Source: Phallusia mammillata (lineage: Eukaryota). From it: a stretch of 64,000 bases of DNA. Position 1 is the stretch's first letter; every line of letters begins with the position of its first letter. Below, piece after piece: positions 1,068 to 53,722 of this stretch. Where the stretch lies: assembly GCA_965637545.1 (NCBI GenBank), contig OZ281496.1:11904001-11968000 (forward strand), written 5' to 3'. The translations under genes were made by a program, and so were the position numbers. The notes under the pieces are model-generated. The model ran no database searches, was not told the origin of the DNA, and saw only the letters and a program-made list of their open reading frames with translations.

Positions 1068-1260
1068 CAGGGATTCCCAACCGGGGGTACTCGTACCCCT
1101 TGGGGGTACGAGATTGAACATCAAGGGGTAACAAGATCGTTGGGCGACACGGCAGCTTTTTAAACAGATTTTACAGTACAGTTTTATTTTGGTATTGTAA
1201 ACGAAGAATGCTCTGACGTGACAAAGGGGTACGACCAACAAAAAAGGTTGGGAACCCCTG
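1068..1260. mobile_element. hAT (Buster/Charlie-type) MITE
   Basis: TIRs CAGGGATTCCCAACC / GGTTGGGAACCCCTG; perfect 8-bp TSD GTCTAGAT at 1060-1067 and 1261-1268. Confidence 0.9.
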
Positions 1261-2381
1261 GTCTAGATGATGTTTTGACAAGTTAAATTATTATGATGAA
1301 AATCCTTTTTGCAATTTCCATGATTCTTTCAGAGCCAAAACGATTCTTTTCAACACTGAAAAGGATGCAAACTTTTCTAAGGAATACCATTGTTTCCAAA
1401 AGACAGGCGTAAATATGCAGTCTGTTATGAGGATATTTCGTCAAAAGAAAGTTTGGCAATGTATAGCAATGCTTATTCAATTTTGTGATGTTGTAGTTGG
1501 AATAGGTTGGCAATAACTTTTTGTTGTTGAGACTATTGAGTTGCATTTAGTAACCACAACAAAAGCGACACTGACACTTATGGAAATTGCATGTGTGCTG
1601 CAACAATTTGAACTTTCTATCATGACTGTTGTGTGCCAACATGCTGTGTCTTTATTACATGCTGCTTAACAGTTTTATTACCATTGTGAGTTTAGTTCCG
1701 ATATCCGGTAACTCTGTGTTTACCAACAGAGCGTCACAGGATGGATGACGTCATATAGAACAATGGTATTACAGCTTTACAATAAACGCCCATGTCCATA
1801 TTATACTTGTATTGAAGCAAAACGCTCGAAAGAAGCATACACGCGAGTAGTAGCAGAATTTAGAATCTAAAAACTTGTTAGGAAAAGTTTTTTTTTACTT
1901 TTCAATTTTGACGCTTTTTCTGAGAAAGTGAAAACAAGTGTAGACGCGTTATTCAACGTAAAACGTGAAACAAAAAAAATGTTACATTTTGCATTTTCCC
2001 AGGCTAAGTTAAACTTTATTAGCCCGGTGGATTCAAACCTGATGATGCCATACAACTTAGGAGATTCTCGTAGTGGTGATAGTTTACAAGCAGGGGAAGA
2101 TCCCTATTTAGAAGTGGAATTCATTATTTCGAGGGTTCGCGGTCTGTAAGCCAGAATGTGTATTTCAGAAAAACGAAAATTAAAATTGCGCATAACAATG
2201 ATCAAAAGACAGCATGTGACACCACAGACAAGATAAAAAACAACAACATTACAATTGTGCGCAAACAATTGCATTTTTGTTAGTTGTTATGCAATAAAGG
2301 CTATTGGAGACAGTCGATTCTCAATTTTACATTGATTTAAACTGATTCAAAGGCACCAACTGACGCCCAAAAAAATTATAA
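1207..2381 (+). repeat. 1.17-kb direct repeat, copy A (host DNA on the left of endogenous virus 1)
   Basis: Near-identical to 5561-6728, from AATGCTCTGACGTGAC to CCCAAAAAAATTATAA. I saw two differing spots: a short indel near 1926/6278 and CAAC versus AAAA in an A-run near 2240/6590. Confidence 0.95.
2002..2149 (+). other. Probable terminal coding exon of an unidentified host gene (duplicated at ~6348-6495)
   Basis: Pyrimidine tract and CAG acceptor (CATTTTCCCAG|GCT), then open AKLNFISPVDSNLMMPYNLGDSRSGDSLQAGEDPYLEVEFIISRVRGL*; protein family not recognised. Confidence 0.4.
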
Positions 2382-3677
2382 TATATAGTCCGCCATTTTG
2401 ACTATGTCCTCGTCGATTGGCCTCTCCTGCAACAATTCCACCATTACCTCTTTTGCCAACTCTATCATGATCTCGTTCGTTCTTGATCCCTTTATCTCTT
2501 TTTGAGACCCTGTCTCAGGATTTGCCGCATCCTCCGGCCACATTGCCTGAATGAACCTCCGTTTCATAGGCTGGAGATCGCCAAGACTTGCCAATTTGAT
2601 CATTGGGTTTTTCGTATTTGTTGTTATATACGCACATGTCGCCTTGTTGTCTTGGCGATCTCCATGGGTCTTCGCACTCCAGTTAGAGTGATACATAAAT
2701 TTAACTGCTGAGATGAGCGCGTCATTGTTGAAGAAACTTGACCCCGCATCATCTATCTTTAACACCTTATGTTTGTGGCGCAGCGCCATCTGCCCCACTC
2801 CCTGCGAGTCGTTGGTCAAGGTACTCGCATACTCCATGGGGAACAAGAACTGACCTAATAAGGTCTTGCCCTTGCCTGCTGCCCCATGGAGACAGAAGTG
2901 GGGTGCGAAACGGATCCCATCCTGCTCCTCGTTTCGCGCCTCTAGCGCTGCGCACACCAGAGCGATCTTCAGCTCGAACGTGTTAAGCTTCCCCTCGTTC
3001 CACTCTATATGTTTTGCCTGGTTGATGATGTCGTTAATGATCTTACATCCATCTTTTACAGACCATTCCTCGTATTTCTTTTTATTGACTCGCCGGAACG
3101 CCTTCTTCATCTTCCGGTTCGCCTTCCCGAAGCTCACGGTGTTATATGCTCTTTTTGCGAGCGTTTCCGGGAAGGCGAAGTCCTTCTCAAAGAGGCGTTC
3201 CTTGAAGGCATTGCAGCTCGGCTTGGTATCAAACGAGTTTGCTACCTCCTCGGCGATCTTCTGCCAACGGGACTGGTTTCCATATTTGTTTCGCTCGTTC
3301 CCTATTTTTTCTATTAGCTCTGGTGGGATTATAGCTGTCTTTTTGTACATATAACGAATGTACGCATTCATATCCTTGACAGGGGCGATATACAGAACGT
3401 TTATGCCCATGCTTGTCAGGATCCGGGTCACACTTTTCTTGGTTAGCGGCGTTGGCCTGCCACTGCCAGTCTGATTGACACCGATGTATAGCCCATGTCG
3501 GTGGCCCTGGTTGGACTGGCCCCGCTCTGAATTCCCCAGGTAAATTACGCCACTGGGTATTTGGTGGATCCCCTCTACCTCCGACTCTGTTGTAAAGGCC
3601 CACTTTCGCGCGCGATAGTTTGCGTCTTCTTCTTGCGGTAGATTCATCCTTGTATACTTCGAATAGCTCTTGTTCAA
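2376..3677 (-). CDS. rep: Replication initiator: HUH endonuclease plus SF3 helicase (first ATG at 3647)
   Basis: RCR motif I RKWAFT, motif II GHRHG, motif III YIRYMYK; Walker A HGAAGKGKT, Walker B VLKIDD, motif C YITTN, Arg finger PMKRRF; the stop codon lies in the duplicated host flank. Confidence 0.9.
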   Translation of the reverse strand: MNKSYSKYTRMNLPQEEDANYRARKWAFTTESEVEGIHQIPSGVIYLGNSERGQSNQGHRHGLYIGVNQTGSGRPTPLTKKSVTRILTSMGINVLYIAPVKDMNAYIRYMYKKTAIIPPELIEKIGNERNKYGNQSRWQKIAEEVANSFDTKPSCNAFKERLFEKDFAFPETLAKRAYNTVSFGKANRKMKKAFRRVNKKKYEEWSVKDGCKIINDIINQAKHIEWNEGKLNTFELKIALVCAALEARNEEQDGIRFAPHFCLHGAAGKGKTLLGQFLFPMEYASTLTNDSQGVGQMALRHKHKVLKIDDAGSSFFNNDALISAVKFMYHSNWSAKTHGDRQDNKATCAYITTNTKNPMIKLASLGDLQPMKRRFIQAMWPEDAANPETGSQKEIKGSRTNEIMIELAKEVMVELLQERPIDEDIVKMADYIL

Positions 3678-3789
3678 GTAACTTTAACGTAGCGTTATTT
3701 TCAGCAACAGTTTTGTTGATATCAGATTTATAAAAGTTCTTAGCTATACTTTGCACTGTAGACGAAGCAGGTAATTGTTCACTGTACAT
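3229..3789 (-). CDS. 186-aa ORF overlapping the 5' part of rep in another frame (NS2-like arrangement)
   Basis: ATG at 3789 (MYSEQLP...); a counterpart with the same frame offset and similar length is in element 2 (46570-47136). Confidence 0.6.
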   Translation of the reverse strand: MYSEQLPASSTVQSIAKNFYKSDINKTVAENNATLKLLEQELFEVYKDESTARRRRKLSRAKVGLYNRVGGRGDPPNTQWRNLPGEFRAGPVQPGPPTWAIHRCQSDWQWQANAANQEKCDPDPDKHGHKRSVYRPCQGYECVHSLYVQKDSYNPTRANRKNRERAKQIWKPVPLAEDRRGGSKLV

Positions 3790-3835
3790 ATTGTAATGAT
3801 AATAAACACAACGAAACACAACATATATACACTTT

Positions 3836-3891
3836 CGTTGGTACCGGTACCACATCATCGGTACTGATTTTAAGTGGTACCGGTACTAACG
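3836..3891. promoter_or_regulatory. Intergenic stem-loop between capsid stop and ORF3/rep; candidate replication origin
   Basis: Arms CGTTGGTACCGGTACCAC (3836-3853) and GTGGTACCGGTACTAACG (3874-3891): 18 bp with one G-T pair, 20-nt loop; no canonical NANTATTAC. Confidence 0.55.
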
Positions 3892-5361
3892 TGGATTGCA
3901 CAATATAACTTTTGCTGACATGGTGTATGGTATTGTGATATAATTGTCGGTCTTTGTTGCGTATACTTCAGCTCCTGCCGACTCTTGGCTGTACGCCACT
4001 GCACACAGATCCTTTTTGATTGATTCCTCGTATATGTGCATCTGAGTATGCATTAGTTTCCCCGATGGTGGTTTCCCTTGTGTGACATCATACCACGGTG
4101 TTTCATCCATTGTGGATGCCGTGTCATTTGTTGATGTAGAACTTGCAATGCATGTAGTATGCGTGTCCCTTTGGAGGAACTTAATTTTTATCACCGTGTG
4201 GTCATCACCCAGCTGGTATCTTGTCATGTTCGGAAACGATTGAAGCGGAAACTCTGTACTGTCAGTATCGAACACGAGAGTTGACACTTGTCCAAAGTCG
4301 AATTTGTTGTCGTACACCATGCTATCAGTGTCCCAAGCCACGTCCATGTACACCATTGGTAATGTCCTGCCACTATCTTCCTGCCTGTTGAGGCATGCTG
4401 CTGGCCACAGTACAATGTTCCAGTCGGCACACTTAAACATCTCGTACTGCGACCCCATTCCCGTTGCTATTATTTCATTTAGACTGTTGTATGACGTCAG
4501 TCCTTGAGGTCCAAAGACTTTCCATCTTCTTGATGCTACTGATCCTCTGTCCCTGCCTAGGCATAGCTGCCTTGATATGACGTCACTGTGGACTATTGAT
4601 TGGTTTGCTATCGCCGGGTAAGCAACGCCTTCAGCCGTCGTCGTAGACTGCCAGTTGTACCACGGTGCCCAGTTTGTCTGCGGTGCTCCCTTGTAAAACC
4701 AGATGAATCCCTTGGTAACCATGGTGTAGGTACATGTAGGACTAGTTGGGTGCATTCTGGGTATGGCCATGGTACGGGTTCCAGACCTTCCCCCGCCTGA
4801 GTTCCCCGCGACACTTTGTCCAAGCCTTGCTTGTTTGGCAGGAGGGTCTCCTCCTCCTCCTTCATCGTCATACATACTGTCCCCATCATTGAGTTCCATG
4901 TCATCTAATTGACTTGTCGGTGGTGACGTTGCTGAAAAACCTCTTTTCCTCATAGCTCCGTCTGCTGGTATGTTGGTGGAGGTGTTTGGTTCTCCTGCAG
5001 CAGCCTTCTTAAGTTGTCTGTTGCGATTGATCTTCTTAAGCCTTGCCCAATCCTTTTTTTGATTGGGCATCTGAGGTAATACCGCCTTTTTAAGTAAAAA
5101 TATATTGCGCACAGTTGCAGCAGCAGGGCCAGTATGATGAGAAATATCTCGCAGTAAATCGTCGTCTGCAGTATTGTATTGCCAGTATGCACTGTTTCCA
5201 AGCTTCCCGTATTGTTTGTCGTGTTCTCTACACTTTGCATCTAGTTCAGATGTTACTTCTTCCCCTATGCTATTCCCAGGCCCACAATGTGGATGTCCAG
5301 GTATTGTAATACCACCAGTTGCGACCTTCTTAGTCGAGCGCAGCGGCATAATGATCAACAT
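3886..5361 (-). CDS. Capsid protein, 491 aa, with N-terminal parvovirus-type phospholipase A2
   Basis: Ca-loop IPGHPHCGPGN, catalytic DAKCREHDKQY and YNTADDDL; basic patch KKDWARLKKINRNRQLKK; Gly-rich linker and PPAKQARL; beta-rich C-terminal ~300 aa with QYEMFKCADWNIVLWP. Confidence 0.9.
   Translation of the reverse strand: MLIIMPLRSTKKVATGGITIPGHPHCGPGNSIGEEVTSELDAKCREHDKQYGKLGNSAYWQYNTADDDLLRDISHHTGPAAATVRNIFLLKKAVLPQMPNQKKDWARLKKINRNRQLKKAAAGEPNTSTNIPADGAMRKRGFSATSPPTSQLDDMELNDGDSMYDDEGGGGDPPAKQARLGQSVAGNSGGGRSGTRTMAIPRMHPTSPTCTYTMVTKGFIWFYKGAPQTNWAPWYNWQSTTTAEGVAYPAIANQSIVHSDVISRQLCLGRDRGSVASRRWKVFGPQGLTSYNSLNEIIATGMGSQYEMFKCADWNIVLWPAACLNRQEDSGRTLPMVYMDVAWDTDSMVYDNKFDFGQVSTLVFDTDSTEFPLQSFPNMTRYQLGDDHTVIKIKFLQRDTHTTCIASSTSTNDTASTMDETPWYDVTQGKPPSGKLMHTQMHIYEESIKKDLCAVAYSQESAGAEVYATKTDNYITIPYTMSAKVILCNPR
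4950..5240 (-). CDS. 96-aa single-pass membrane protein overprinted (+1 frame) on the PLA2 region
   Basis: TM segment EIFLIILALLLQLCAIYFYL, basic KRRYY..KKR, PPPTY, C-terminus QTEL; same-length homologue at 45243-45533. Confidence 0.75.
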   Translation of the reverse strand: MQSVENTTNNTGSLETVHTGNTILQTTIYCEIFLIILALLLQLCAIYFYLKRRYYLRCPIKKRIGQGLRRSIATDNLRRLLQENQTPPPTYQQTEL

Positions 5362-5370
5362 ATTAATTTT

Positions 5371-5530
5371 ACTTACCTTATATACTTCCTCTTTCTCCTT
5401 TCTCCTATTCTCCTAGTACCAGTACCACTTCTGTGGTACTACTGCTATGTGGTACTGCTTATAACACCCTCTATGTGGTACTGGTACTTCAATATTCTAT
5501 TATATCCATTAACCCATTGATCTAATAGGT
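5371..5530. promoter_or_regulatory. Capsid-upstream region: TATA/donor-like GTATATAAGGTAAGT, reiterated AGTACCAC motifs and inverted repeats
   Basis: Inverted repeat AGTACCAGTACCAC (5415-5428) / GTGGTACTGGTACT (5475-5488); small hairpin AGTACCAC-TTCT-GTGGTACT (5421-5440). Confidence 0.55.
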
Positions 5531-5560
5531 ACCATTATTTGGTACTGTGACGTCAGAATA

Positions 5561-6728
5561 AATGCTCTGACGTGACAAAGGGGTACGACCAACAAAAAAG
5601 GTTGGGAACCCCTGGTCTAGATGATGTTTTGACAAGTTAAATTATTATGATGAAAATCCTTTTTGCAATTTCCATGATTCTTTCAGAGCCAAAACGATTC
5701 TTTTCAACACTGAAAAGGATGCAAACTTTTCTAAGGAATACCATTGTTTCCAAAAGACAGGCGTAAATATGCAGTCTGTTATGAGGATATTTCGTCAAAA
5801 GAAAGTTTGGCAATGTATAGCAATGCTTATTCAATTTTGTGATGTTGTAGTTGGAATAGGTTGGCAATAACTTTTTGTTGTTGAGACTATTGAGTTGCAT
5901 TTAGTAACCACAACAAAAGCGACACTGACACTTATGGAAATTGCATGTGTGCTGCAACAATTTGAACTTTCTATCATGACTGTTGTGTGCCAACATGCTG
6001 TGTCTTTATTACATGCTGCTTAACAGTTTTATTACCATTGTGAGTTTAGTTCCGATATCCGGTAACTCTGTGTTTACCAACAGAGCGTCACAGGATGGAT
6101 GACGTCATATAGAACAATGGTATTACAGCTTTACAATAAACGCCCATGTCCATATTATACTTGTATTGAAGCAAAACGCTCGAAAGAAGCATACACGCGA
6201 GTAGTAGCAGAATTTAGAATCTAAAAACTTGTTAGGAAAAGTTTTTTTTTACTTTTCAATTTTGACGCTTTTTCTGAGAAAAAATGTAGACGCGTTATTC
6301 AACGTAAAACGTGAAACAAAAAAAATGTTACATTTTGCATTTTCCCAGGCTAAGTTAAACTTTATTAGCCCGGTGGATTCAAACCTGATGATGCCATACA
6401 ACTTAGGAGATTCTCGTAGTGGTGATAGTTTACAAGCAGGGGAAGATCCCTATTTAGAAGTGGAATTCATTATTTCGAGGGTTCGCGGTCTGTAAGCCAG
6501 AATGTGTATTTCAGAAAAACGAAAATTAAAATTGCGCATAACAATGATCAAAAGACAGCATGTGACACCACAGACAAGATAAAAAAAAAAAAACATTACA
6601 ATTGTGCGCAAACAATTGCATTTTTGTTAGTTGTTATGCAATAAAGGCTATTGGAGACAGTCGATTCTCAATTTTACATTGATTTAAACTGATTCAAAGG
6701 CACCAACTGACGCCCAAAAAAATTATAA
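5561..6728 (+). repeat. 1.17-kb direct repeat, copy B (includes only the right end of the 1068-1260 MITE)
   Basis: Near-identical to 1207-2381. Confidence 0.95.
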
Positions 6729-20774: not shown

Positions 20775-22033
20775 TTAGCAGTGAACCTTAGTAAGATTCA
20801 TTAACTCACAATACTTGTTGCAATGATGGTTGCTTACAAATTCATTAATAGCAATTGCTGAAAGATTTCCAGCACAAAACATAATTTCTGTACTGTCACT
20901 TTTACAAAACAGATCCTTAGTTGCTATTTCTGGATCATAAAGCTGAAAACCTGTGCCTTGGACATCTAAAAGCATGAAGCTTTTGTTCGAGTATTCATAA
21001 CTATAATGCACCAAGCACTCTGCCTTCTCAACAACTTCAACTCTGCCCCTTTGTACTTCACCAGTGTTGTTGACGTATTTGGTAAACTTTCCTTCTACAT
21101 ATGGTTCAACAGTAGCAGCCTTTCCTTTGTATGTTGTGTAAAAAACTGTTTTGTACTCAAATGTTTCCCCCAAATCAGGAGGTGCTAGTGATCTAAATTT
21201 CTCAGTAACAGCTTTGGCTACGCTGTGCATCTGCACCTGCTTTTTTGCATGTGCTTCGAGGGTCAAACTCAAATCATTTGTTACAGTGTCTTCTGCTTCT
21301 TTGCGATAAGTTTTTAAAACCCAGCATTCTTGCTGTTCATGTTGGCGTTGTTTGACACAAAAGGCCTTGTAGGCATCTCTAAATGCTCCATGGGAAAACT
21401 GATTTTCTTCAACATCAAAGGAATCAGGTGGGTGTTGAAACCAATCTAAATTTTGCAATACAAATTCATCTTTGATTAATATAACTCGATTTTTTGGCAC
21501 TGACTTAACAAGTTTTCCAGCTCTTAAGAGTTTGGTGATTGAGATGGATGGTGGATTGATTAAGGGTATCTTTTGAAAGTCATTGTCATCATGATTGTGG
21601 TTGGTAGATTTGCTTGCACATGTTTTGGATACATTTGCTTGCTCAGAAATGGCTAAAAATCGTATCATAAAGAACTTTTTACCCTTCACCTGCTCAATCC
21701 GAGAACAAGATGGCCCTCTATCAGATGCCAAAACATCACAAGATCCAGATGGCTGATTGTAAAACTCCTCACAAGCTTTTTTAATGCTATCAAGAGAAAG
21801 TTCACTGCTGTGGTATGGAACAAAGTCCCGGGTATCCATTGGTTCGAACTTTTTTAATCTTCCTGATGGCACACTGGCCATTTTTTGAACCATAATTTCT
21901 GAAGTTACATTTTTTTCAGGTTTCTTTCCTTTTCGTTTGACTGCTAACCGAGCTTCCAACTGTTCCCAAGTCTCTTTTCGCTTCATATCAAATAAATTTT
22001 TTTGTAAAAGTTGTGTTTTTGCCAAACATTCTA
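20775..22033 (-). CDS. Alpha-kinase (eEF2K/MHCK/TRPM7-type domain); main exon, with a decayed 5' exon likely up to ATG ~22565
   Basis: FSHGAFRDAYKA, VLKTY, VEPYVEGKFTKYVNN, AECLVHYSYE, MLLDVQG, LYDPEI, FCAGNL...HHCNKYC; acceptor TTTGTTTAG near 22033. Confidence 0.9.
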
Positions 22034-36529: not shown

Positions 36530-39135
36530 GTTTGTTGCACAGAGAGTGTTCGTGGGAGTTATCCCAAATTCGACGTCATTAAAAGTCGAAAAACTGACAT
36601 CGTTGTAAGACGTCGAAATTCCTAAATTTTGTTGCACTTTTGACCACATTGTGGCGACCTCTCATGCATGTGTACAATTGTGATTATCGAAGCGTGCATT
36701 TTGCTTTTTTCTCGTTGTGTCGTTGTCGCCTTATAAGCGCGTTTTCAGTGTTGCGCGCCCTTCTATTATTATCGAACTTCAATGAAATAAAGCATTCGCT
36801 TTCCTGGAACGAATTTTGAAGTTCATGGAATCTGTGTCCCTTAAGCTTCCGACGTTCTTTGGCTACAGCAAGTGGAAGCTCAATTTGCTTTGAAGAAGAT
36901 TGTTGCTGACGAAACTAAGTTTATTATGTTGTGTCAGGATTGGACCAAGCTACAGCAGCTCGCTTAATTGATCTTGCTTGAACGCCCATCGGCAGAAGGT
37001 AAATACAAAGCAATTAAAAAAAGGCTGCTTCAACCGTTTTTTCCAGACAGGAACGTGCAGCGCGTCTTTTGAACATGCCTCCTTTCGGTGACAAAAAACC
37101 ATCGGCTTTCATGGATGAGATGCTTTCTCTACTTGGAAATCACAATTCGTGTTTACTTTTTGAACACTTGTTTCGCCAACAGATGCCCGAGGATATCCGA
37201 TTGGTATTGGCGCAAGAAGATACACAAGATCTGCGCCAATTAGCCCAGAAGGCCGACGTATTGTGGCTTTCTGGCGATCGCAACGCGGAGTTTGCACACG
37301 TCAAGGTATGCTTGCCCGCAGTGACAGCAAGAAGCCTTCCGGCATGTGCTACTTCCACTGGCGTTTTGGATCCGATGCAAACCAATGCCGTCCACCATGT
37401 ACTTTCCAGGGAAACAGCAAGGCCGTTTGCCTTGAATGGCTGGGGCAACCGGCAATTCTTTCAGCTTTTTCTTTCTCCGGGATAAAGTCTCTGGGCGCAA
37501 TTTCTTGGTTGACACGCGTGCTGAAGTAAGTGTAATTCCGCCTACTGGTGCTGAGCGACGTGCCAGCACTAAGGGTTTCTTTCTTAAGGCCGCTAATGGA
37601 AGTTCCATAGCTACTTACGGCTACAAACTTCATTTTTCAGCTGGAGTTTTTAAATGGAGGTTTGTGTTGGCTGATGTTTCGCGTCCACTGCTTGGTGCAG
37701 ATTTTCTCCGTGCTAATCGTTTATTGGTCGACATTGACAAAAAACGTCTGGTAAGTTTTCCCATGAAAAGGTCTCTTTGTCAACCGCCACAGCTTAGCAC
37801 TCTTTACTCTTTGCTTTCTCCATACGACAAGCTGTTGCAGATGTTTCCCAGGTAAAAATCCCCAGTTTTCAGATGCTTTGCCCAAACACGGTGTGCAACA
37901 TCACATTGTGACCACAGGCCAACTTGTGCATTGCCGCGTCAGGCGCCTCTCGCCTGAGAAGTTGTTGTTGGCAAACAACGCCTTTCCAATCACGGACTTG
38001 TTGTTAATCGTTAATCCTCAGAAACGTGAGTTCGGCAAAAGCAGCATACAGTTTCTCGGCCACTTGGTCGACCAACATGGAAACCTCTTCCTGCAAAAGT
38101 TTATGCCATCCGAAATTCCACTTGGTCGATCCAACATGGAAACCTCTTCCTGCAAAAGTTGATGCCATCCGAAATTTTTCTGTGCCACAAACGGTCAAGG
38201 GCTTACAGGAGTTTTCGGGTATGCTCAACTTCTATCACAGATTTCTGCCAAACATTGCAACCATCATGAAGCCACTGTATAGTTCCTTATCTGGTAAACC
38301 AAAGGAACTCACATGGACTTGAGATGAAAGAAGCCTTGCTCGTGCGACCCTGTTGCATCACCCACAGTGGCAAGCCAGCATAGCACTTACAGTTGATGCT
38401 TCTCAACAGCTGTTGGTGCAGTACTCGAACAGTTTACAGAAGGTCATTGGGCCCCTCTTGCGTTTTTCAGCCGTCAGCTGCGAAAACCCGAAACCAAGTA
38501 CAGCGCCTTTGATCGCGAACTTTTAGCACTTCACCCGGCCATAAGGCACTTTGGCTATTTTCTTGAAGGGCGCAAGTTTACAGCGTTTACCGATCATAAA
38601 CCCCTTACTTTCGCATTCAAGAAGGTTTCTGAGCTCGACAGCAACGTCATCTGTCGTGTATTTCGAAGTATACAACAGATGTCAGACACATCAGCGGCAA
38701 GTCAAACACTGTCGCAGATGCACTTTCTAGATCGTTTGTAAATGCTCTACACAGTTCTTTGACGAATTTTGATCATAAGGCTCTTGCTGAAGCGCAACAG
38801 ACGGATGAAGTTCAATCTTACCGCACTGCAGTTACTGGGTTGCCTCTTAGGGATGTTCCAATTGAAGCCTTGTCGACTACTATTCTATGTGATGTTTCTT
38901 TCGGACGACCACGTCCTGTTGTTCCCTGCTCCTGGCAAAGGAAAGTTTTTAACGCCATCCACGGGTTGTCACATCCTTCCATTCGCACCACGAGGAAGCT
39001 TATATCATCCAAGTTTGTTTGGCATGGGCTGAAAAAGAATGTTGCGTTGTGGGCTAAACGATGCCTTGCTTTAAGCGCGTTTTCAGTGTTGCGCGCCCTT
39101 CTGTTATCGAACTGCAATGAAATAAAGCATCCGCT
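36530..39135 (+). mobile_element. Internally deleted, decayed Gypsy LTR retrotransposon
   Basis: gag from ATG 36825 (MESVSLKLPTF), protease NFLVDTRAEVSVIP, partial RT (FLGHLV, FSGMLNFYHRFLPN), RNase H, integrase Zn domain (HGLSHP..T..WHGLKK); LTR-like direct repeat at ~36733-36800 and ~39073-39135. Confidence 0.9.
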
Positions 39136-40084
39136 ATAGACCAGGGGTGTCAAACTCGCGGCCCACAACCACTTCACAACAATTGCATTCTTCTGTACGA
39201 TTAATCGGCTAATTTCTTTCGGCTGAAACCGAGTCGGCCTATTCAGCAGTTTTGCCGAATAAAATCGGCCGAATCAACCGAATGATTTACGACTTCTGAG
39301 CAGCCCTTTCGTATTTGAATTGCTTTGTGACGTAAAATTTGTGTATTGTTTAATGATAGTCGCATTTGTGACAAAACTTTGAATAACAAGACAGCTAGCA
39401 AATCTGAACAGTGTTTAATTTAGCTTCAGTAAAAGAAGCTTAGAGTTAGAAGAAGTGTAGGGATGAATAAAAATGGGCCGCATCTGGCGAAATCACCAGC
39501 CACCACATTTTTTGTCAGTTTACAATTGCGGCTCGTTCCGATCAAAGTATATATAAAAACACAAGTAGTTCAACCCATTGTTACGCCATAGAGCCGCATG
39601 GACGCCATTTTGTGTCCAAATTAATACAGCAAGTGCAGGGAAAAACACATAAATTGTCTGATTTTTACAAACTTGTAGGCTTTAACGCGAAATTAGTACA
39701 CAAAATCGAATAAAAGGGTTCTAACATTTGAGCGTGATAATGCACGCTGAATTCAAATATTTAAAGTTTACATAAACAATAAGCGGCAAAATTTACATGA
39801 AAAAAAAGCAATTTAGCTTTTAATATTGCGTTGAAATGTTAGAACCCGAAATTTGCCTTCAATTTGGATGATCAAATTCACGTTTAACCTCTCCAGTTTG
39901 TAAATATCAAACGATTTAGGTGTTATTTTCCTCTACCCAAAGTGTCATTTTGGACACAAAATGGCCCCATAGGCTTTATTGCGTAACAATAGGTTGGACC
40001 ACTTGTGTTTAACCTAGACTTTGGTTCCGGTTGGTGCATTGTGCATTGTCTTTTGTTTGTGAACATTTGCAGTTATTTTCGAAA

Positions 40085-41970: not shown

Positions 41971-44900
41971 ATCTTGTAAGTTTAGACTAAACTGATGCTA
42001 GTTTTTGTTGTGATTTTGTAAAATATTGGTGGATGAAAATGTCAGTCCGCAATCATCACAGAGTAAGTTGTTAAACTGAAAAAAGGTGTATAGAAGTACT
42101 CTAGTTTTAGTTGATGTGACAGATAACTGTTTCTTAGTACTACTTGTATGCTTCAATAAACGTCCGAAAAGCCTTATGGTTCTGAAAATCTGATGATATG
42201 GGCCAAAAAATGCAATTTATTTTAAAAATGTCGCAATTTACGTTTGACGTCCAAATTTTGGGGTCAAATCCCAACGGATTTCAATGAAACTTGCAGGAAA
42301 TACAAATAACAGTTATTACTTCTCAAAACGACCTAATAGTAAAAATAAAAAACAGATTAAATGTAATTACTGCAAATTACACTTTGGAAAAACAACGATC
42401 TATAATTCTGTAATCAAAAAACGCAAGAAATTGACACTGGAATGCAATGAGTCGCACACACATGCAATCGTGAAGGTATTTAGCTCCTATGCTGTAAAAA
42501 GCAAAAGAGAACTTCGATTCTGCACGAAATATTAATCATACGAAAGTTGATTATCAATGCCGGTTGATTACCCAACCAACGGACTCCCGGTTTATCGTCT
42601 TGCCCCAAAACAAGTCGTATTATATACAGGAAGTCCAGTTAAACAACCAGAAATGTACGTTAAGGTTTTCATGCACTGTACAGATGTTTCAAAAATTTGT
42701 GGAATGCTTGGTGCTAATAAAGCACAAGCCGAAAATAAACCAACTCGTGTGGCAAGTAAAATTATTCACCGCGATGTAACCAGTGGCGAAACAGCCAGCA
42801 CCAAGCAGGATAAAGTAAAATCAAAAGGATGTGGAAGATAAGAAAGTCGGAGCGGATAATCACAGTGCCGATGAGTGGAAAACCATTTTAAGGCGGATAA
42901 GATAAACAAACCAATAAATTACAGACTGGAAAGTCTACACTAGATATTGGAAAAAATAAGAATCTTCCCCTCATATCTCTTCTTGCATCTAACAGTTATG
43001 GGGCGTATCAAAAATAACAATACACGGTAAAAAATCTTTTGAAGTTTAATAAGGCCAGTTAAATCATGGAAAGAATTAAAATCTTAAGCGGTTTAAAAAC
43101 TGCAAACCGATTTGGACCGGATAATAATTTGACCAAACCGGAACAAAACATCAACCCCAAAATACACATTTTTAAAAAACTAAACGAACCCGGACCCCTG
43201 AAAATGATCTAGTCCTAAATACTTAATTGTTAAACTCAATGAACTAACAAGTGCGGTTCTTGTGGAAGAATCACAAAATGAAACCAGCGGTGTCTTCTTT
43301 GTAGCCAAATCTTGCTTTTCACCAATGCAGAGAACGCTTTGCAGGAATTAGACACATTCAGGATAAGTTTTGTTGATGATAAGACTGGGGCGGACTCGTT
43401 CTAGATATTTTTACTTAAAGTTCCTACCACAATCTTACAGATAAGTTTCAGTATACTGATTTTTTATTCTTTAGCAATATATAATAAGTATAATTTCCGC
43501 CCTAAACGGCATTTTTTTCCCTTTTTAATAAAAAATAGGGCGAAAAAATTCTATTTGAATAAGATAATAAGTGTTTTAAATAATATGTTTAACTGGAACT
43601 GCAAGAAATCTGCACAAATTTCCAAGACACAAGAATACATCTGTTCTTTCTGTTGACAGAGAGACATCTTTCTGTTGATAGAGAGACACATTTTTTATGT
43701 GCAAAACGCAAACATGATTACACAATATTCACTCTTACTTAAAAAGCAGTATAATGTGCACAACTCGGGATCTTCCAGACAAGACATGCTTACTGAACAA
43801 TCCCAGCCATGTAAAGAAACAAACAAAACCTTTACGTCATCATTTATAACCAACCTATGAACATGGCAACATTGTAAAGCTTAACTTAGCTTTAAATTTG
43901 TAACCACAGTTACACCTGTTCGAAACCTGGGCTTTTGTCTGACTAACCTGATTTTGGGGACTAAGCTGTTTTCTTCTTTCAAATCAAATATAACATTACT
44001 TTTTAGCATGTAAACAATCCATTTTTTTGCAAGTTTGGTGCACAGTATGACACATAGTTTTAAAAAAATCCTTGCAAACCCTAAAACCTTTCATATCAAT
44101 TGCTCGTGTTTTAAGTAGTTTTAAGTAAATTTTGACGCACAGAACAAAGCTAGCAGTTTAAAGTGTGGTGATATATTCTTAATCAGTTTGACATATTTTG
44201 ACAAGCTAAGCAACAACTGACACGCACCTCCCATTCCCAACACCCGTATTCTAACTTTCCCATTAAATGCAATGGAAACAGAGAGATATTTTGTCGCACA
44301 AAGATTCTAGCATCGCTTTCAAAACGACAGCCAGACCACACGGTGCATGCGATGTATGTGTGTTCGGTGCGAAATTTCTTTTACATGTATGACGTAACAA
44401 TGAACGGTTAACTATATTATATACTCATGAGTATAAAAATAAGACAATAAAATGACGTAAAGTTAATTTGACTAAAAAAATTAGAATAATGTGTACCATT
44501 TTAATCCCATAACCAATTCTCTCTGGTGTGTGGCTGCCCGTTGGTTTTTGTTTGCGTAATCAATCATGACAGTATGTGAAATGGTGTGCATATCAGTAGA
44601 TAGGTTTCACGCACTGAGGTCAAACGCAATGACTGTCTTCCCCCAACGCCAGCTATGGTGACAACTGGGCCTGACGTGGGGAATTTGCCGATAAAAATAC
44701 GAATGCTTCAGGTACCGGAAACGAGCAATCGTCCAATGGTTCGTCATGTGATAAATCGAAATAGAGCCCCAGTGGCGCCAGGGTGCATCAGTCGTGTGGT
44801 GTCGGCCCCAACTTGAAGTAATACGTATTTTTTTCAATTTTAGTAAAAGAGCAGGGTACAAATGTTTAGCAGCGTATAAATAATGCAACAATTTTTGTTA

Positions 44901-45133
44901 GAACAGAACGTTTAGCAGCGTACGAATAATGTAACAAAACAGCATAAAGATAAAGGGACGTGTGAGTAGTTAATTGTGTAAAACAAACTCCATATTCTAC
45001 TATCTGGCACTGGCACAACAGTTATTTTTAAGGCGGCACCGCACCAGTAGGATGAGGTAGTGTGTGCAGTGCTGGTGTCAGTGGTGTCAGAAAAGGGTAT
45101 ATGAGGTAAATGAAAAATTATTTAAAAGTCGGA

Positions 45134-46479
45134 ATGCAGTAGAGGTCGACTAGGAAGCTAGCAACTGGTGGTATTACCATACCAGGAAATCCTTATTGTG
45201 GACCAGGAAACCAGATTGGAGAGGAGGTTACCTCTGAACTTGATGCTCAGTGTCGGTAACACGACAAACAGCACTCAGAACTCGGACCCTCAGAGTACTG
45301 GAAGTACAACTCTGCGGATACTAATCTACTCAGAAATATCGCTAATCATACTGGCCCTGCTGCAGCAATTGTGCGCTCTGCTTTTCTATCTAAAAAAGCA
45401 CTATTCCTTTCAATGTCCCCTACAAAGAAGAACTGGGCACGGATTAAGAAGATCCAGGTCTATAGAACATCTGCGGCAGCTGCTGGCGGAGTACCAAGTA
45501 CCTCCTCCACAGTACGTGGAAACGGTAATATGAAAAGGAGATTTAATGCTAATAGTCCACCAACAAGTCAACTTGACGATATGATGCTCGAGGATGGGGC
45601 AGACATTGAAGAATATGAAGAAAACGGAGGAGAACCAGCCGCTATACAATCAAGAATGGGGTACTCAGGTGGTGGGAACTCTGGGGGGATGCAGATCCCT
45701 ATCACGTACCGCACCACTGCCCCATATATCATCCGAATAAATCTGTATTAATGTCCTCGGTTATCGGAAGACAGTGCCATTTAGGAATAGACTGGAGAGG
45801 GACAACATCTGGTAGAAGATGGCGCTTCACGGACAAAGCCGGAATAGGAACGATGAGCCATTCAACCCTCAGTGCAATAACAACCTCGTACGCAACATAC
45901 GAGCTAATCAAGTTCAAAGATTGGACAATGACCATGTGGCCTTGCACCAGTATGAACAGACTCCAAAGCGGAACCTCAGAAGACGGAGGAAACGGAGGGC
46001 GAGCAAGCCCATTAATATACCTGGATGTAGCCTGGGAAAAAGACTCCCTGTTGAAAACCAATTCATGGGACCTGGGATTCATCGATTCCAGTCTGACGGG
46101 AGCTCAGCTGAACAGTTACGAGTTCCCAATGAGCCACAACAACTCCTTAAAAAGGTTCCAACTCGGAGAAGACTTTACGACGATTCCCATCCAATTTTTA
46201 CAACGGGATACCCATACAGTGGGGAGGGTGACGTCGGAAGTGACAGCGGACACAGTGAACACCAATTTCGAGACTCCCTGGTACGACATAACCACATGTC
46301 CAGCACCTTCATCAAAGGCGATGATAACGCAAATGATAGTATATGCGGATTCCATAACCAAAAACCTGCAAGCAAGCACATACCGTCCGACAGCATCGAC
46401 CTATGCAGCCCAAGAAAGCAACTATATCACGATACCTTACACGATGTCAGCAACAATATGCTTATCGTGCCCGAAATAA
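45134..46479 (+). pseudogene. PLA2-bearing capsid pseudogene
   Basis: GGITIPGNPYCGPGNQIGEEVTSELDAQCR*HDK (TAA 45257-45259; TAG 45140-45142); internal deletion and frameshift near 45690-45750; C-terminal part FLQRDTHT, ETPWYD, NYITIPYTMSA matches element 1. Confidence 0.9.
45243..45533 (+). CDS. 96-aa overprinted membrane protein (homologue of 4950-5240), ORF intact
   Basis: MLSVGNTTNST...EISLIILALLLQLCALLFYLKKHY...PPPQYVETVI. Confidence 0.7.
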   Translation: MLSVGNTTNSTQNSDPQSTGSTTLRILIYSEISLIILALLQQLCALLFYLKKHYSFQCPLQRRTGHGLRRSRSIEHLRQLLAEYQVPPPQYVETVI

Positions 46480-46569
46480 ATGTATATTACTTTTGTTTTT
46501 TCGTTTGCATGATTTATGGTTCGTTGTATTTGAGTTTGCATGCACATTAAAAATTTGTTAACCTTACAG

Positions 46570-47136
46570 ATGTTTCCTTGTAAAACAGAGACCGATAAGG
46601 TTATCCATAACTATAGCAAACAAAGTGTATATGAAACAACTGCGGAATATGCAAAACGAAGAGAAAAAGAGTGTGAATGGTATCGAGAGCAATGTCACGG
46701 AAGGTACAAGAAGCAGGAGATGGGCAGTAACAACCGATGTCTTTACCGATGGCGCAAGCAACATCCTTCAAGGCCCAACGTTTGTGTTGTACTGGGGGCC
46801 CAGGGAGCAAGGAAGGTCCGCCAATCATCACAGGCATGGCATATTCAGTTGCACCTGTCAGACGCCAGGTCAACAACCATCGCCCCGGACCAAGAGCGCG
46901 GTTATAAAGCTACTGAAGCAGATGGGAATAACTGTTACTTACATTGCCCCAATAAGGGATATGGCAGCATATGTTCAATATGTTTACAAGAGCGATCGGA
47001 GTGCCATACCAGAAAATCTGAAAGAACTGTGCACAAAACAAAAATACACAAACCGCCAAGGATCAAGCTACTACGAAACAATTGCAAAGGAGGTAGCGAA
47101 ACAGTTTACAACGAAACCAAGCATGAATCAATTTAA
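46570..47136 (+). CDS. 188-aa ORF overlapping rep 5' region (homologue of 3229-3789)
   Basis: Same frame offset to rep; N-terminal KVIHNYSKQSVYETTAE versus SIAKNFYKSDINKTVAE in element 1. Confidence 0.55.
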   Translation: MFPCKTETDKVIHNYSKQSVYETTAEYAKRREKECEWYREQCHGRYKKQEMGSNNRCLYRWRKQHPSRPNVCVVLGAQGARKVRQSSQAWHIQLHLSDARSTTIAPDQERGYKATEADGNNCYLHCPNKGYGSICSICLQERSECHTRKSERTVHKTKIHKPPRIKLLRNNCKGGSETVYNETKHESI

Positions 47137-47707
47137 AGAGGAGCTATACAAAAAGGACTTTTCTTTCCCGGAATTATTAGCTAAACGCGCCTACAATACG
47201 GCACAGTTCAACACGAAACAAAGAAAATTTGCAAAAGTATCAAGGCGAATGAAGGAGAAAGTTAGTCAGAAAATGGATTTAAAAACAGCCAAAGAAATCT
47301 TTATGAAGATCACTAGCCAAGCCAAAAATATAAATTGGCAGAACCAAGACCTAACACCAGAAGACTTGAGGGTTCTATTGATTCAAACGGCATTAGAACT
47401 ACGCAACACCACAAGCGGTGGCATAGAGCTTTCGCCCCATTTTCTCCTGCACGGAGCGGCCGGAAAAGGCAAAACCCTGCTGGGACAGCTGTTGTATCCC
47501 ACAGAGGTAGCCAGCATCCTCACCAACGACAGCCAGGGGGTGGGTCAGATGGCGTTACGCTTCCGTCATAAAATGTTAAAAATCGACGACGACGGTTCCG
47601 CATTCTTTAACAACGATGCGATATTGTCGGCCGTGAAATTTGTAAATATATTGTGTTGTGTTTATCGTTGCATTTATCGTTATATAGTTCGTTTAACACT
47701 TAACTAA
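46625..47707 (+). pseudogene. rep: Rep, truncated after Walker B (homology ends at 47641)
   Basis: RRWAVT, HHRHG, YVQYVYK, HGAAGKGKT, MLKIDD; 56 of 69 residues identical to element 1 from PHF to SAVKF (hand count); lacks motif C and Arg finger. Confidence 0.88.
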
Positions 47708-47909
47708 CAAATAAAACAAAAAAGGTTAAAAAGAGAATATGAGAGAAAAAGAAAAAAGGGGATGACGAAAAAGAAAAAGGGGATGACGTTATTGTATGTT
47801 GTAGCAGCCGATGTGGTTGCATTGTACCAAGCGTCGGCAAAGATCTTAGCCAGCGTTCAATTATAGATGCATTACAGCGACAATCTATTTCCATGTTCAT
47901 CATCACATT

Positions 47910-48794
47910 ATGAATGTGATGATCCAAATGCAGGGAAATGAAGATCACTTAAATCATTAAACACTGAAAGATCACATCATGGAGCATGTGTGATTGATAT
48001 ATGGAAAAATTTATGTTCTTGGTGGGTTTGGTCCTCGGTAAGTGTTATTGTAGTATGAGATTTGGAGTTGTATATCTTGCGTCACAAACTCCTTTAACAA
48101 ATCAGTGTTTAGTCCTGTAGCTCAAGCAGTAGTTTCCCCAGTCGATCAACACAGTGTCTAAGTTGGTTTGAATTTACACTATTTATGAAACACGCCATTG
48201 TGGTGTTCTTCTGTGTTTGGTCATGGAGTACAAGCAGCTGTTATAAACTGCCAGATTGGGTGGGTGGTGTAGTTTGATAGGTGCAATCTACATTAAAAGC
48301 AAAAAAAATCTAGCTTGGTAGTATTTATATGGTAACACTAACACAGCAAGGGTCCAAATCACTGTTTTGACGAGTACCCAAACAAGGGGGTTGCTGCTCT
48401 AATGGTTCGCGATGTATTTTTAAGTAGGTCTGTTTTTAATACCTGGCACGCCAACACTTGTGATACTATCCCAGTACCACGATTTGCACACGGATTGTGC
48501 AAAGTACCAACACACATCTTCTTTCGTATTTCTTGGCTGTTTGCTCTGCACATGGGTATTTTTTGTATGCTACTCGCAACACACTTGTTTGTTTACAAAA
48601 ACAAATTTATGTTTGCGACCAGTTTCGTCAACAATAAAAACTTTTTAGTAGCAGCTCTCAAAAAAAAGATTCTACCCGCATGTTTTGTTACACAGGGTCT
48701 AAGTTCAGTTGAAGTTTACGACCCTTTTCAGGATTCTTGGACACATTTGTTTGACTTGGAAAAACCTGTTGGTGGTGATGCAGTCGTAGCTTAA
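47910..48794 (+). pseudogene. Kelch-repeat gene 3' exons (~47910-48037 and ~48693-48794), disrupted
   Basis: ECDDPNAGK*RSLKSLNTERSHHGACVID[+4 nt]GKIYVLGGFGP|GTAAGT; last exon GLSSVEVYDPFQDSWTHL..*. Confidence 0.7.
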
Positions 48795-51872: not shown

Positions 51873-52810
51873 CAGCGGTTCCCAACCGGGGCCCATGGCC
51901 CCCTACCGTTGTATATGCTGGATCATACTTACACGATTCGGGAACTAAGATCGACTTGCAGTTTATTAAATTTAATCCAAGTCGTTTGAAGTTGGTGGTG
52001 TCCGTGTTCGAATTGACTATTCAGCAACTTTGCTCACACAGGGATCGCCAGACGCGGTGGCTCTTTGATCCTTCTGATGCGTGTTACTCAAAAATTACCA
52101 AATGTTTTCATTACATTTTTGTGTGACGATTATGTCGAACACAAAGTCGAAATGATATTAATCATTTCAATTTGTGCCTTTATTCTGTTTGAGAAATCAA
52201 TACTTAACCTGATAGATATTTTTAATCTAAATTTTAAAATGTCAAAAATTCGACAATGGAATGACGACTACGTTTCATTGGGCTTTACAAAAGTCAAACG
52301 GAATGGTTTTGATTGCGCGCAATGTCTGCACTGCTCGATCGTGATTCGTGATGTCAAATGCGTCACTACGTCCCTCCAAGCTTAAAATCCACCGCGACAA
52401 GAAACATGAGGGAAAGTCGACTGACGACATTGGAGCACTGTCTGTGAAAAGAGCGCGGTACGACCGGGAAGCGTCGATATACTTTGGATTCGTTCCAGAA
52501 GACAATCCTGCTCTTCTATGCAGTTATGAAGTGGCATATAGAATCGCCAAGTGCAAGAAGCCACACACTATTGCTGAGGATCTTTTCAAGCCCTGCGCGG
52601 TAAAGAGGTTGATATCTTGATCGGACTAGGAGCGAAAAAAAAATCCAACAAGTATCGCTATAAAATAATACAATTAGACGACGAATTGACTGCATGGCTG
52701 TTGATGTCGGCCACCAGGTTTGTTCCGAAATCAAACAGAGTGTGGTCCAGGCACCGACCCCTTGGATCAATTTAAGGGGGCCACGGGCAACTAAAGGTTC
52801 GGAACCACTG
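51873..52810 (+). mobile_element. Internally deleted hAT Buster-type element
   Basis: TIR-like CAGCGGTTCCCAACC / GGTTCGGAACCACTG; N-terminal transposase MSKIRQWNDDYVSLGF..CLHC..SLRPSKLKIH, YEVAYRIAKCKKPHTIAEDL. Confidence 0.8.
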
Positions 52811-52849
52811 GTTTAGACAAACAGTACATGTCCATTAAATCAAAACACA

Positions 52850-53722
52850 TTCTTGCACTTGGTTGCAAATACTGTCCACATGGTGTGTTCAAATCCACAC
52901 TTTAAATTGTCTTCACTCAGGTATTTTAAAATTCCTTTTGCTTCTGCAGTTGTTTGTTCTGCATTTGATATTGCCTGAATTTCAGTGACGCATTTAACTT
53001 CACAGTCACAAATTTATTTTTTCTTGGGCAGCATTAAGAACTAAAACTGAGTATTTCTTGCTGTTGCTGATTCCTGCGTGACATTGGAGCAGCAGATGTT
53101 TTGTCCCATACTTTCATACAACTTTTTAATTCAGTTATATATTATAAAGGTTAATTGTGACTTTTCAAGGTGTTAGATGACTTTTTTTCTTTTTCAAGGT
53201 GTAAGATACACTTATTTAATTCAATGATAACTGTAAAAACTGAAACCCCAGTCATCTTAAAAAGTCAAGACTAACAGTCAAACAATAAATTTTATAATAG
53301 CAAAAGAATTATTTAACTGCACTCACTGTCGAACTTAAATATACAGTACACGGGTTTGGCTTTGGAGCGCACTGACGCGAAGTATTCACAACACAACTAT
53401 AGCGATACGTCACGGGAGGGGCTGCGCGAGCCACTGCCCCCTGTCGCCTATTTCGCCCGGTATGCAGCTTTTCCAAGTGCGCATGCGCACAGCTCAAAAC
53501 GTCACGAAACTGCAGCTGCAGCTCCACCATAGATAACATAATAGTGGCATATTTTTTTTAAAAAGGAAAAAAATGCCGATCAAGGTTGAAGTTATATTTA
53601 TTAACTTATATATTGCTAAAGAATAAAAAAGTATAATGAAAGTTATCCGTCATATTGGAATATTAGGTAAAAATATCTAGGGGGTGCTGCAGCTCCGCAG
53701 CCCCCTCGCACGAGCCGCCCCT
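52850..53722 (-). mobile_element. Inverse copy of the 12519-13490 hAT-derived repeat
   Basis: Colinear reverse-complement similarity; terminal GAGCCGCCCCTG. Confidence 0.75.

What the first reader, a model, noticed from the sequence alone, without database searches (positions are those of the whole stretch)
44990..47641. Second, divergent member of the same virus lineage ~40 kb away, in inverted orientation
Seen: the same gene order, overlaps and motifs, with helicase core 56/69 identical and much more divergent nuclease and capsid regions. It has nonsense codons, a capsid deletion and a truncated Rep. Inference: an independent, older germline integration of a sister virus. This makes the chimeric organisation a real viral architecture rather than an integration accident, and two integrations in one locus suggest a hotspot or retention in a silencing cluster.
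Basis: partly seen in the sequence, partly recalled or inferred. Interest (0 to 1): 0.85.

Follow-up and report, generated by a model that had tools for sequence, protein, structure and literature searches.

The report
Second degraded copy of integrated ssDNA virus
A broken, shortened second copy of a small DNA virus sits about 39 kb from an intact-looking relative in what looks like an animal chromosome; the two were clearly separate viruses before they entered the genome, which is an ordinary kind of viral fossil from a virus lineage that no database names.

Summary
Window 45000-47644 (+) carries the same three reading frames as the element at 2382-5557 (-). These are a PLA2-bearing capsid-like ORF, a short ORF overlapping the start of Rep, and an HUH-nuclease/SF3-helicase Rep. 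Identity is 51% in both long genes and 55/69 to 56/73 in the helicase stretch.

Element 2 has 1-2 stops, 1-2 frameshifts and about 50 missing codons in the capsid-like gene. Its Rep is unbroken but ends after 328 of 433 codons.

Independent integration is well supported:
- The flanks share no homology.
- Third codon positions are saturated while first and second are not.
- Neutral drift would give 8-13 stops in Rep, and none is seen.
- An outside protein (P0001) groups inside the pair.

"Older" is only weakly supported. "Sister" is loose, because element 1 may be closer to P0001. The hotspot or silencing-cluster idea is untested.

The shared gene order predates the split. Both copies end inside Rep, so a circular or concatemer permutation, or a lost downstream gene, is not excluded.

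The Rep family (about 60 clusters) has no name and no Pfam or PDB sequence match. The contigs that would settle gene order were not fetched (referred).

The parts
45000..47644 (+). Element 2 as a whole: a degraded, 3'-truncated integrated copy. The 5' bound is soft.
   Evidence: Outer bounds of homology to element 1. Upstream motif block. tblastn of all relatives hits only the 45000-47999 and 2000-5499 bins of the window.
45000..45142 (+). Upstream promoter-like region: iterated short motifs (TGGTGTCAG twice, CTGGCAC twice), then a TATA-like block shared with element 1.
   Evidence: Function is inferred and was not tested.
45143..46479 (+). Capsid-like gene with an N-terminal PLA2 region. It is broken: 1-2 in-frame stops, 1-2 frameshifts, and about 50 codons missing relative to element 1 and P0004.
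   Evidence: PLA2 assignment comes through element 1 (Pfam PF08398, E 1.4e-10; AAV VP1 unique region).
46480..46618 (+). Short intergenic stretch between the capsid-like gene and Rep. It holds an AATAAA, a TATA-like GTATAT and two copies of a 19-nt repeat.
   Evidence: (D9).
46540..47136 (+). Overlapping ORF (198 aa). It starts upstream of Rep and runs across the first about 170 Rep codons in another frame. It is the counterpart of 3229-3858 (-) in element 1.
   Evidence: 24% identity, E 4e-5; no stops in this frame in either element, against 3-4% further on.
46619..47644 (+). Rep: HUH nuclease-like domain, helical middle region, and the first part of the SF3 helicase (Walker A and B). It has no stop or frameshift. 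It is cut after the equivalent of residue 328 of 433, so motif C and the arginine finger are absent. The ORF runs on to 47707 in unrelated sequence.
   Evidence: Fold assignment comes through element 1 Rep.
2382..5557 (-). Element 1, the comparator: upstream region, a 491-aa PLA2/capsid-like ORF (3886-5361), a 209-aa overlapping ORF (3229-3858), and a 433-aa Rep ORF (2376-3677) that stops 6 nt into the flanking repeat.
1207..2381 (.). Left copy of the 1176-bp direct repeat that brackets element 1. It starts inside a 207-bp MITE-like unit (1061-1267), so it is host DNA.
5561..6728 (.). Right copy of the same direct repeat (2 mismatches and 3 gaps against the left copy).

Best explanation
Element 2 is a dead, incomplete endogenous copy of a small ssDNA virus from the same clade as element 1. 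It entered this chromosome in a separate event.

Shown:
- It keeps the order upstream motif block, PLA2-bearing capsid-like gene, short overlapping ORF, Rep.
- Its capsid-like gene is broken.
- Its Rep lacks the last third, including helicase motif C and the arginine finger.

Inferred:
- It can neither replicate nor build particles.
- The roughly 50% protein divergence from element 1 arose while both lineages were still under selection as replicating entities, because synonymous sites are saturated and replacement sites are not.
- Only a small amount of neutral decay, of the order of 1%, has followed the loss of selection.
- Integration was by non-homologous capture of a sub-genomic or permuted fragment. 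No genome ends, terminal repeats or target duplications are visible around element 2.
- What it does now is most likely nothing. At most it yields a transcript from its own TATA-like blocks: a truncated Rep N-terminal product or substrate for small RNAs.
For: - Homology and lesion counts.
- Virus origin of the genes: Pfam PLA2 PF08398 and AAV VP1 unique-region matches. The AlphaFold model of element 1 Rep has pLDDT 87, and its best solved-structure match is full-length AAV2 Rep68, followed by SF3 helicases. In BFVD it matches CRESS Rep and parvovirus NS1 models.
- Near-invariant family columns fit HUH (HxH), YxxK, Walker A, motif C and the arginine finger.
- Host context on both sides: an LDLa+7TM ORF, an alpha-kinase, integrase and hAT pieces, MITE-like repeats, and no N in the window.
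- Independence from element 1: no flank homology; codon-position pattern and saturated pS; expected stops under neutrality; P0001 nested in the clade.
- Modest post-integration decay.
Against: - Germline fixation is assumed from presence in the assembly. It was not tested.
- There is no direct evidence of an exogenous virus. The relatives are unnamed proteins on public contigs that I did not fetch.
- Two members of a rare lineage within 40 kb is an unlikely coincidence under random integration. That leaves room for a common cause, such as a local hotspot or an intragenomic source.
- The capsid identity of the C-terminal 300 residues is inferred only. The structure prediction failed.
Confidence: 0.75

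Rival explanations
1. Both elements are copies of an endogenous, self-propagating element family: a virus-like mobile element, or repeated re-integration from an endogenous source. On this view they are not two germline captures of free viruses, and selection acted on the family inside host genomes.
For: Two members lie within 40 kb. Some relatives sit on long contigs of 41 kb and 175 kb, which look like cellular DNA. Each gene of element 1 has its own iterated motif plus a TATA block.
Against: No terminal repeats or target duplications bracket element 2. The 1176-bp repeat around element 1 is duplicated host DNA, not an element end. A PLA2-bearing capsid-like gene under purifying selection (omega 0.29 in its N-terminal part) points to particle-based transmission. 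Several relatives lie on 3-5 kb contigs, the size of small virus genomes.
Confidence: 0.12
2. The capsid-first order is not the native order. Either both copies derive from circular or head-to-tail concatemeric forms that were linearised within the 3' part of Rep, or a true capsid gene downstream of Rep was lost from both. The second case would resemble the published lineage with the order PLA2-ORF, unknown ORF, NS1, VP. This rivals the reader's 'real architecture' inference, not the integration itself.
For: - Both copies start about 150-200 nt upstream of the first gene and end inside Rep.
- The gene-to-gene spacer of element 1 holds an 18-nt-arm palindrome made of the same GGTACYRGTAC motif as the region upstream of the first gene.
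- Full-length relatives have 105-140 more Rep residues.
- PMC13426907 section 3.3 describes PLA2-ORF-first parvovirus genomes.
- The jelly-roll fold of the first ORF is untested.
Against: The spacer is short in both elements. It carries a TATA-like block and the start of a conserved overlapping ORF, which looks like a native intergenic region. Element 2's spacer has no palindrome. The Rep family gives no Pfam Parvo_NS1 hit, unlike what would be expected for the published lineage.
Confidence: 0.3
3. Element 2 arose by an inverted host duplication of element 1, followed by neutral decay.
For: Same locus, inverted orientation, same gene order.
Against: - No flank homology at word size 7 or by tblastx.
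- Nucleotide divergence is about 33-51%, concentrated at third positions.
- 8-13 stops are expected in Rep and 12-20 in the capsid-like gene, against 0 and 1-2 seen.
- Element 1 is intact.
- P0001 is nested between them.
Confidence: 0.02
4. Assembly artefact or contaminating viral reads joined to host DNA.
For: None specific. The virus-like stretches have 45-46% GC against 38.7% in the background.
Against: There are no gaps in the window. Element 2 is broken and truncated in ways free virus reads would not be. Element 1 is bracketed by duplicated host DNA that contains a host MITE-like unit.
Confidence: 0.03

Closest known systems
Endogenous parvoviral / densovirus-derived elements in animal genomes (e.g. 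PMC5013282, PMC7737747, PMC9707805)
   Same: Virus-derived NS/Rep and VP sequence inside host DNA. Some copies are intact and others carry stops, frameshifts and truncations. Several copies per genome are common. VP has an N-terminal PLA2 region and a glycine-rich linker.
   Different: Rep has no sequence-level match to Parvo_NS1 or to any solved structure. The PLA2-bearing gene lies upstream of Rep on the same strand. No hairpin ends are seen.
Oomyviridae (order Lineavirales; the 'parvo-like hybrid virus' NIH-CQV/PHV group), as described in PMC13426907, PMC12451638 and PMC4419787
   Same: The combination of a PLA2-containing, parvovirus-affiliated capsid protein with a non-parvoviral HUH/SF3 Rep. 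Genome size is small. Related endogenous copies exist in cellular genomes.
   Different: Those viruses are assigned to stramenopile hosts, while this window carries animal-type genes. No search returned a named oomyvirus relative. I could not compare gene order or ends. Membership was therefore not shown.
'Megaparvovirus'-like lineage with atypical organisation (PMC13426907, section 3.3)
   Same: A PLA2-bearing ORF at the 5' end, then an ORF of unknown function, then NS1/Rep. Endogenous copies with all ORFs in order occur in insect genomes.
   Different: Those genomes are about 6.4 kb with a separate PLA2-less VP downstream of NS1, and their NS1 is recognisable as parvoviral. Here nothing lies downstream of Rep because both copies are cut there. 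The PLA2 ORF has a well conserved 300-residue C-terminal domain, and Rep is not recognisable by sequence.
AAV2 Rep68 (PDB 9bc5), the nearest solved structure to the Rep model
   Same: The same two-domain plan, an HUH origin-binding nuclease followed by an SF3 helicase. The structural alignment spans both domains (E 4e-7).
   Different: Identity is 9-12% and TM-score only about 0.3, since the domain arrangement differs. CRESS Rep models match as well as parvovirus NS1 models in BFVD. Walker B is spelled with two aspartates, as I recall for CRESS Reps, rather than the two glutamates of parvovirus NS1 (from general knowledge, not tested).

Membership tests
Endogenous viral element (EVE) | Coding sequence of viral origin | tested here: met
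   PLA2 PF08398 and AAV VP1u matches through element 1. Rep fold is HUH+SF3. Element 2 is 51% identical to both genes.
Endogenous viral element (EVE) | Continuous with host chromosomal DNA on both sides | tested here: met
   No N in the window. Host-type ORFs and transposon fragments lie on both sides.
Endogenous viral element (EVE) | Germline fixation (same locus in other individuals or species) | not testable with these tools
   No other assemblies of the host are available here.
Parvoviridae | NS1 with a Parvo_NS1-type SF3 helicase recognisable by sequence | tested here: not met
   No Pfam hit for Rep of either element or for 25 family members. Only P-loop matches in PDB sequences.
Parvoviridae | PLA2 motif in the VP1 unique region | tested here: met
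   The N-terminal part is 61% identical in element 2.
Parvoviridae | NS gene upstream of VP (monosense) or on the opposite strand (ambisense) | tested here: not met
   In both integrated copies the PLA2/capsid-like gene is upstream of Rep on the same strand. The native order is uncertain because the ends are missing.
Parvoviridae | Terminal hairpins | tested here: inconclusive
   No convincing inverted repeats bracket element 2. Both copies are truncated, so absence says little.
Parvoviridae | Jelly-roll capsid fold | tested here: inconclusive
   AlphaFold with 3 rows gave pLDDT 28. A profile search of PDB matched the PLA2 region only.
Oomyviridae / parvo-like hybrid viruses | PLA2-containing capsid protein combined with a Cressdnaviricota-type Rep | tested here: inconclusive
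   PLA2 is met. The Rep fold matches CRESS Rep and parvovirus NS1 models equally. No Pfam Viral_Rep hit. No named relative was returned.
Oomyviridae / parvo-like hybrid viruses | Stramenopile host (endogenous copies in oomycetes) | tested here: not met
   The window encodes an LDLa + rhodopsin-type 7TM ORF and other animal-type domains.
Oomyviridae / parvo-like hybrid viruses | Linear genome with terminal repeats | not testable with these tools
   The ends are absent from both copies. Fetching relatives was referred.
Host segmental duplication | Homologous flanks and a neutral substitution pattern | tested here: not met
Small-RNA (piRNA-type) silencing cluster | Dense transposon fragments that produce small RNAs | not testable with these tools
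   Transposon fragments are present, but so are long gene-like ORFs. No small-RNA data are available.

The most novel reading that the evidence does not exclude
The two elements record an animal-infecting lineage of small ssDNA viruses. This lineage joins a parvovirus-type PLA2 capsid gene to a non-parvoviral, CRESS-like HUH/SF3 Rep. The order is truly capsid-first, with a conserved accessory gene overlapping the start of Rep. It would be an animal counterpart of the stramenopile 'hybrid' viruses (Oomyviridae), so far unnamed although about 60 protein clusters of its Rep exist in public data.
Probability: 0.3. Interest if true: 0.7.

Novelty: new variant of a known kind. Interest (0 to 1): 0.45.

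Why it matters
A second, divergent copy turns a single odd insertion into a lineage. It shows that the PLA2-ORF, overlapping ORF, Rep arrangement and its motifs were maintained by selection across about 50% protein divergence, so it is not a one-off rearrangement.

It also provides a pair for dating and for asking whether the locus attracts or retains such insertions.

The Rep family behind it is unnamed in the public collections searched here. It is invisible to Pfam and to PDB sequence search. Endogenous copies like these may therefore be the best handle on its hosts.

As a genomic feature, though, element 2 is an ordinary decayed viral fossil.

Tried and rejected
- Pfam on all ORF pieces of element 2 and on Rep of element 1: no hits except PLA2 in element 1.
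- PDB sequence search with Rep and with a 25-member profile: P-loop matches only.
- Word-indexed protein search with the capsid-like ORF, alone and as a 3-row profile: a single relative, P0004.
- AlphaFold of the capsid-like ORF: unusable, pLDDT 28, so no fold search was run on it.
- Cluster look-up for names: none.
- Four weak 'relatives' (P0049, P0054, P0055, P0059) are bacterial beta-propeller repeat proteins, so they are chance hits.
- Search for the 1176-bp repeat of element 1, or its leader, near element 2: nothing by blastn or tblastx.
- CpG depletion and GC amelioration as age markers: no difference between the elements.
- Rfam and tRNA scans of the window: nothing.
- The bacterial promoter/terminator scan is uninformative for this eukaryote-like DNA.
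- The 243-aa ORF at 45819-46550, which overlaps the capsid-like gene, has no counterpart in element 1, so I treat it as chance.
- Domestication of the open Rep piece: with 3-4 lesions in 431 capsid codons, seeing none in 325 Rep codons is not significant (about P 0.07 by a Poisson argument). Rejected as unsupported.
Full report
**What is there**

The window has no gaps and looks like animal chromosomal DNA.
- One ORF combines three LDL-receptor class A repeats with a rhodopsin-type 7TM region (9209-10360).
- Other ORFs include an alpha-kinase, an integrase-core ORF, hAT/DUF4371 pieces and LTR-retroelement fragments.
- Two stretches stand out by composition: 45-46% GC against 38.7% in the background, with opposite AT skew.
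- Element 1 lies at 2382-5557 on the minus strand. Element 2 lies at about 45000-47644 on the plus strand. Their 5' ends face each other 39.4 kb apart.

**Element 1 as reference**

It has three open frames.
- A 491-aa ORF (3886-5361) has an N-terminus that matches the parvovirus VP1 phospholipase A2 domain (PF08398, E 1.4e-10) and the unique region of AAV VP1 chains. A glycine-rich linker follows, then 300 residues with no match.
- A 209-aa ORF (3229-3858).
- A 433-aa Rep ORF (2376-3677).

Rep has no Pfam or PDB sequence match. An AlphaFold model built on 25 relatives is confident (pLDDT 87).
- Its best solved match is full-length AAV2 Rep68, followed by the SF3 helicases of papillomavirus, SV40 and others.
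- Among predicted viral structures it matches CRESS Rep and parvovirus NS1 about equally.
- Near-invariant family columns fit the HUH histidines, a YxxK motif, Walker A, motif C and an arginine finger.

**Checking the observation**

In-frame pieces of element 2 match element 1 strongly. A frameshift-aware alignment, from which I kept only counts and outer bounds, gave the figures below.

| Gene of element 2 | Window span | Identical codons | Lesions |
|---|---|---|---|
| Capsid-like gene | 45143-46476 | 222/431 | 1-2 in-frame stops, 1-2 frameshifts, about 50 codons missing |
| Rep | 46619-47644 | 168/325 | no stop, no frameshift; ends after the equivalent of residue 328 of 433 |

- The missing capsid codons are a loss in element 2, because the outside relative P0004 keeps that stretch.
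- Nothing further of Rep occurs anywhere in the window.
- Identity by domain: helicase 55/69 to 56/73, nuclease 46%, middle region 43%, capsid C-terminal part 43%, PLA2-bearing part 61%.
- The overlapping ORF is also shared. In both elements the same alternative frame is free of stops over the first 148-169 Rep codons, although it has 3-4% stops further on. The joint chance is of the order of 1e-5.
- Upstream of the first gene, both elements have iterated short motifs followed by a shared TATA-like block. The motifs themselves differ between the elements.

**Duplication or separate integrations**

The flanks of the two elements share nothing beyond a dispersed short repeat family that lies on the wrong side and in the wrong orientation.

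Divergence per codon position:

| Region | Position 1 | Position 2 | Position 3 |
|---|---|---|---|
| Rep | 0.41 | 0.32 | 0.65 |
| Capsid-like gene, C-terminal part | 0.48 | 0.37 | 0.67 |

- Synonymous change is saturated in both of these regions.
- The less diverged N-terminal part of the capsid-like gene gives omega 0.29.
- If the divergence had been neutral, 8-13 stops would be expected in the Rep piece (P of none 1e-6 to 2e-4), and 12-20 in the capsid-like gene.
- In a neighbour-joining tree of 21 Rep sequences, E1, E2 and the outside protein P0001 form a clade (98%). E1+P0001 group in 76% of replicates and E1+E2 in 16%.

Host duplication is thus excluded. 'Sister' should be read as 'same clade'.

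**Age**

Element 2 has more lesions. Its one or two stops imply only 0.01-0.02 neutral substitutions per site since selection stopped (95% interval 0.0002-0.07). Element 1 allows 0-0.029.
- Relative-rate tests show no consistent excess of private amino-acid change in E2 Rep.
- GC content and CpG ratios are the same in both elements.
- The two copies of the repeat around element 1 differ by only 2 mismatches and 3 gaps in 1176 bp. If that duplication dates the integration, element 1 is very young.

'Older' is therefore plausible but not demonstrated, and element 2 is not ancient.

**Architecture**

The shared order predates a split that evolved under selection, so it is not an accident of one integration. 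Still, neither copy shows genome ends.
- Element 1's Rep ORF stops 6 nt into a 1176-bp direct repeat. That repeat is duplicated host DNA, because its left copy begins inside a complete 207-bp MITE-like unit.
- Element 2's Rep is cut earlier.
- Full-length relatives have 105-140 more residues.

Three readings remain.
1. A native capsid-first genome.
2. A permuted fragment of a circular or concatemeric form. Element 1's spacer holds a palindrome made of the same motif as its upstream region.
3. A PLA2-ORF-first genome whose true capsid gene lay downstream of Rep, as in a recently described parvovirus lineage (PMC13426907).

**Relatives and naming**

An exhaustive HMMER search found 65 cluster representatives.
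- A few of them are spurious bacterial repeat proteins.
- None of the ten looked up carries a meaningful name; one is called only 'hypothetical protein'.
- They lie on contigs from 1.7 kb to 175 kb.
- The capsid-like ORF has a single relative.

The literature offers two comparators. One is the Oomyviridae, the 'parvo-like hybrid viruses', which have a PLA2 capsid with a CRESS-type Rep and stramenopile hosts (PMC13426907, PMC12451638, PMC4419787). The other is the PLA2-ORF-first lineage above. No tool returned a named member of either, so membership is not shown.

**Hotspot or silencing cluster**

This was not tested. The window holds transposon fragments but also long gene-like ORFs. The two elements point away from each other.

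I did not fetch the DNA of any relative, because it may be a virus of animals. That step is referred.

Those places are not repeated in the notes or in this report.

Noticed in passing
window 1207-2381 and 5561-6728; MITE-like unit 1061-1267: Element 1 is bracketed by a 1176-bp direct repeat (2 mismatches and 3 gaps). The left copy starts inside a complete 207-bp inverted-repeat unit. The repeat is therefore host DNA duplicated around the insert: either a very long target duplication or a later rearrangement.
   Followed up: partly
window 3836-3891 and 5414-5487: The motif GGTACYRGTAC occurs five times in the window, all in the two gene-upstream regions of element 1 (0.02 expected). Between the two genes it forms an 18-nt-arm palindrome. 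It is a possible Rep-binding or origin-like site. Element 2 uses different iterations (45005-45090).
   Followed up: partly
window 3229-3858 (-) and 46540-47136 (+): An ORF that overlaps the start of Rep is kept open in the same relative frame in both elements. It is 24% identical between them and has no family match. It is probably a real accessory gene of the lineage.
   Followed up: partly
window 5370-5385 (-) and 45097-45112 (+); 46560-46572 (+): The TATA-like block shared by both elements runs into a sequence that resembles a 5' splice-site consensus. A pyrimidine-rich stretch ending in AG precedes the ATG of the overlapping ORF in element 2. Splicing from the leader to the Rep region is conceivable. 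No tool predicted it.
   Followed up: no
window 9209-10360 (+): A single 383-aa ORF with three LDL-receptor class A repeats and a rhodopsin-type 7TM region. This is a host receptor-like gene or a large exon, and the best clue that the host is an animal.
   Followed up: no
window 19371-22025 (-): An alpha-kinase ORF (416 aa) lies directly upstream of an integrase-core ORF (414 aa) on the same strand. This may be one mobile element carrying a kinase.
   Followed up: no
window 17562-18177: A tandem array of a 17-nt AT-rich unit (about 26 copies, 94% matches), followed by two copies of a 95-nt unit.
   Followed up: no
window 30020-31774 (-), 37436-39139 (+), 60473-62272 (-): Transposon remains: hAT dimerisation and DUF4371 pieces, a retroelement protease/integrase zinc-finger fragment, and a 599-aa ORF with a weak DUF4371 match.
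   Followed up: no
window 755-953, 12520-13417, 43401-43537, 52807-53722: A dispersed repeat family, 76-82% identical between copies. One copy lies 1.5 kb upstream of element 2 and one lies near element 1. It is not evidence of shared flanks.
   Followed up: partly
window 45819-46550 (+): A 243-aa ORF overlaps the C-terminal half of the capsid-like gene of element 2 in another frame. It has no counterpart in element 1 and is probably chance.
   Followed up: partly
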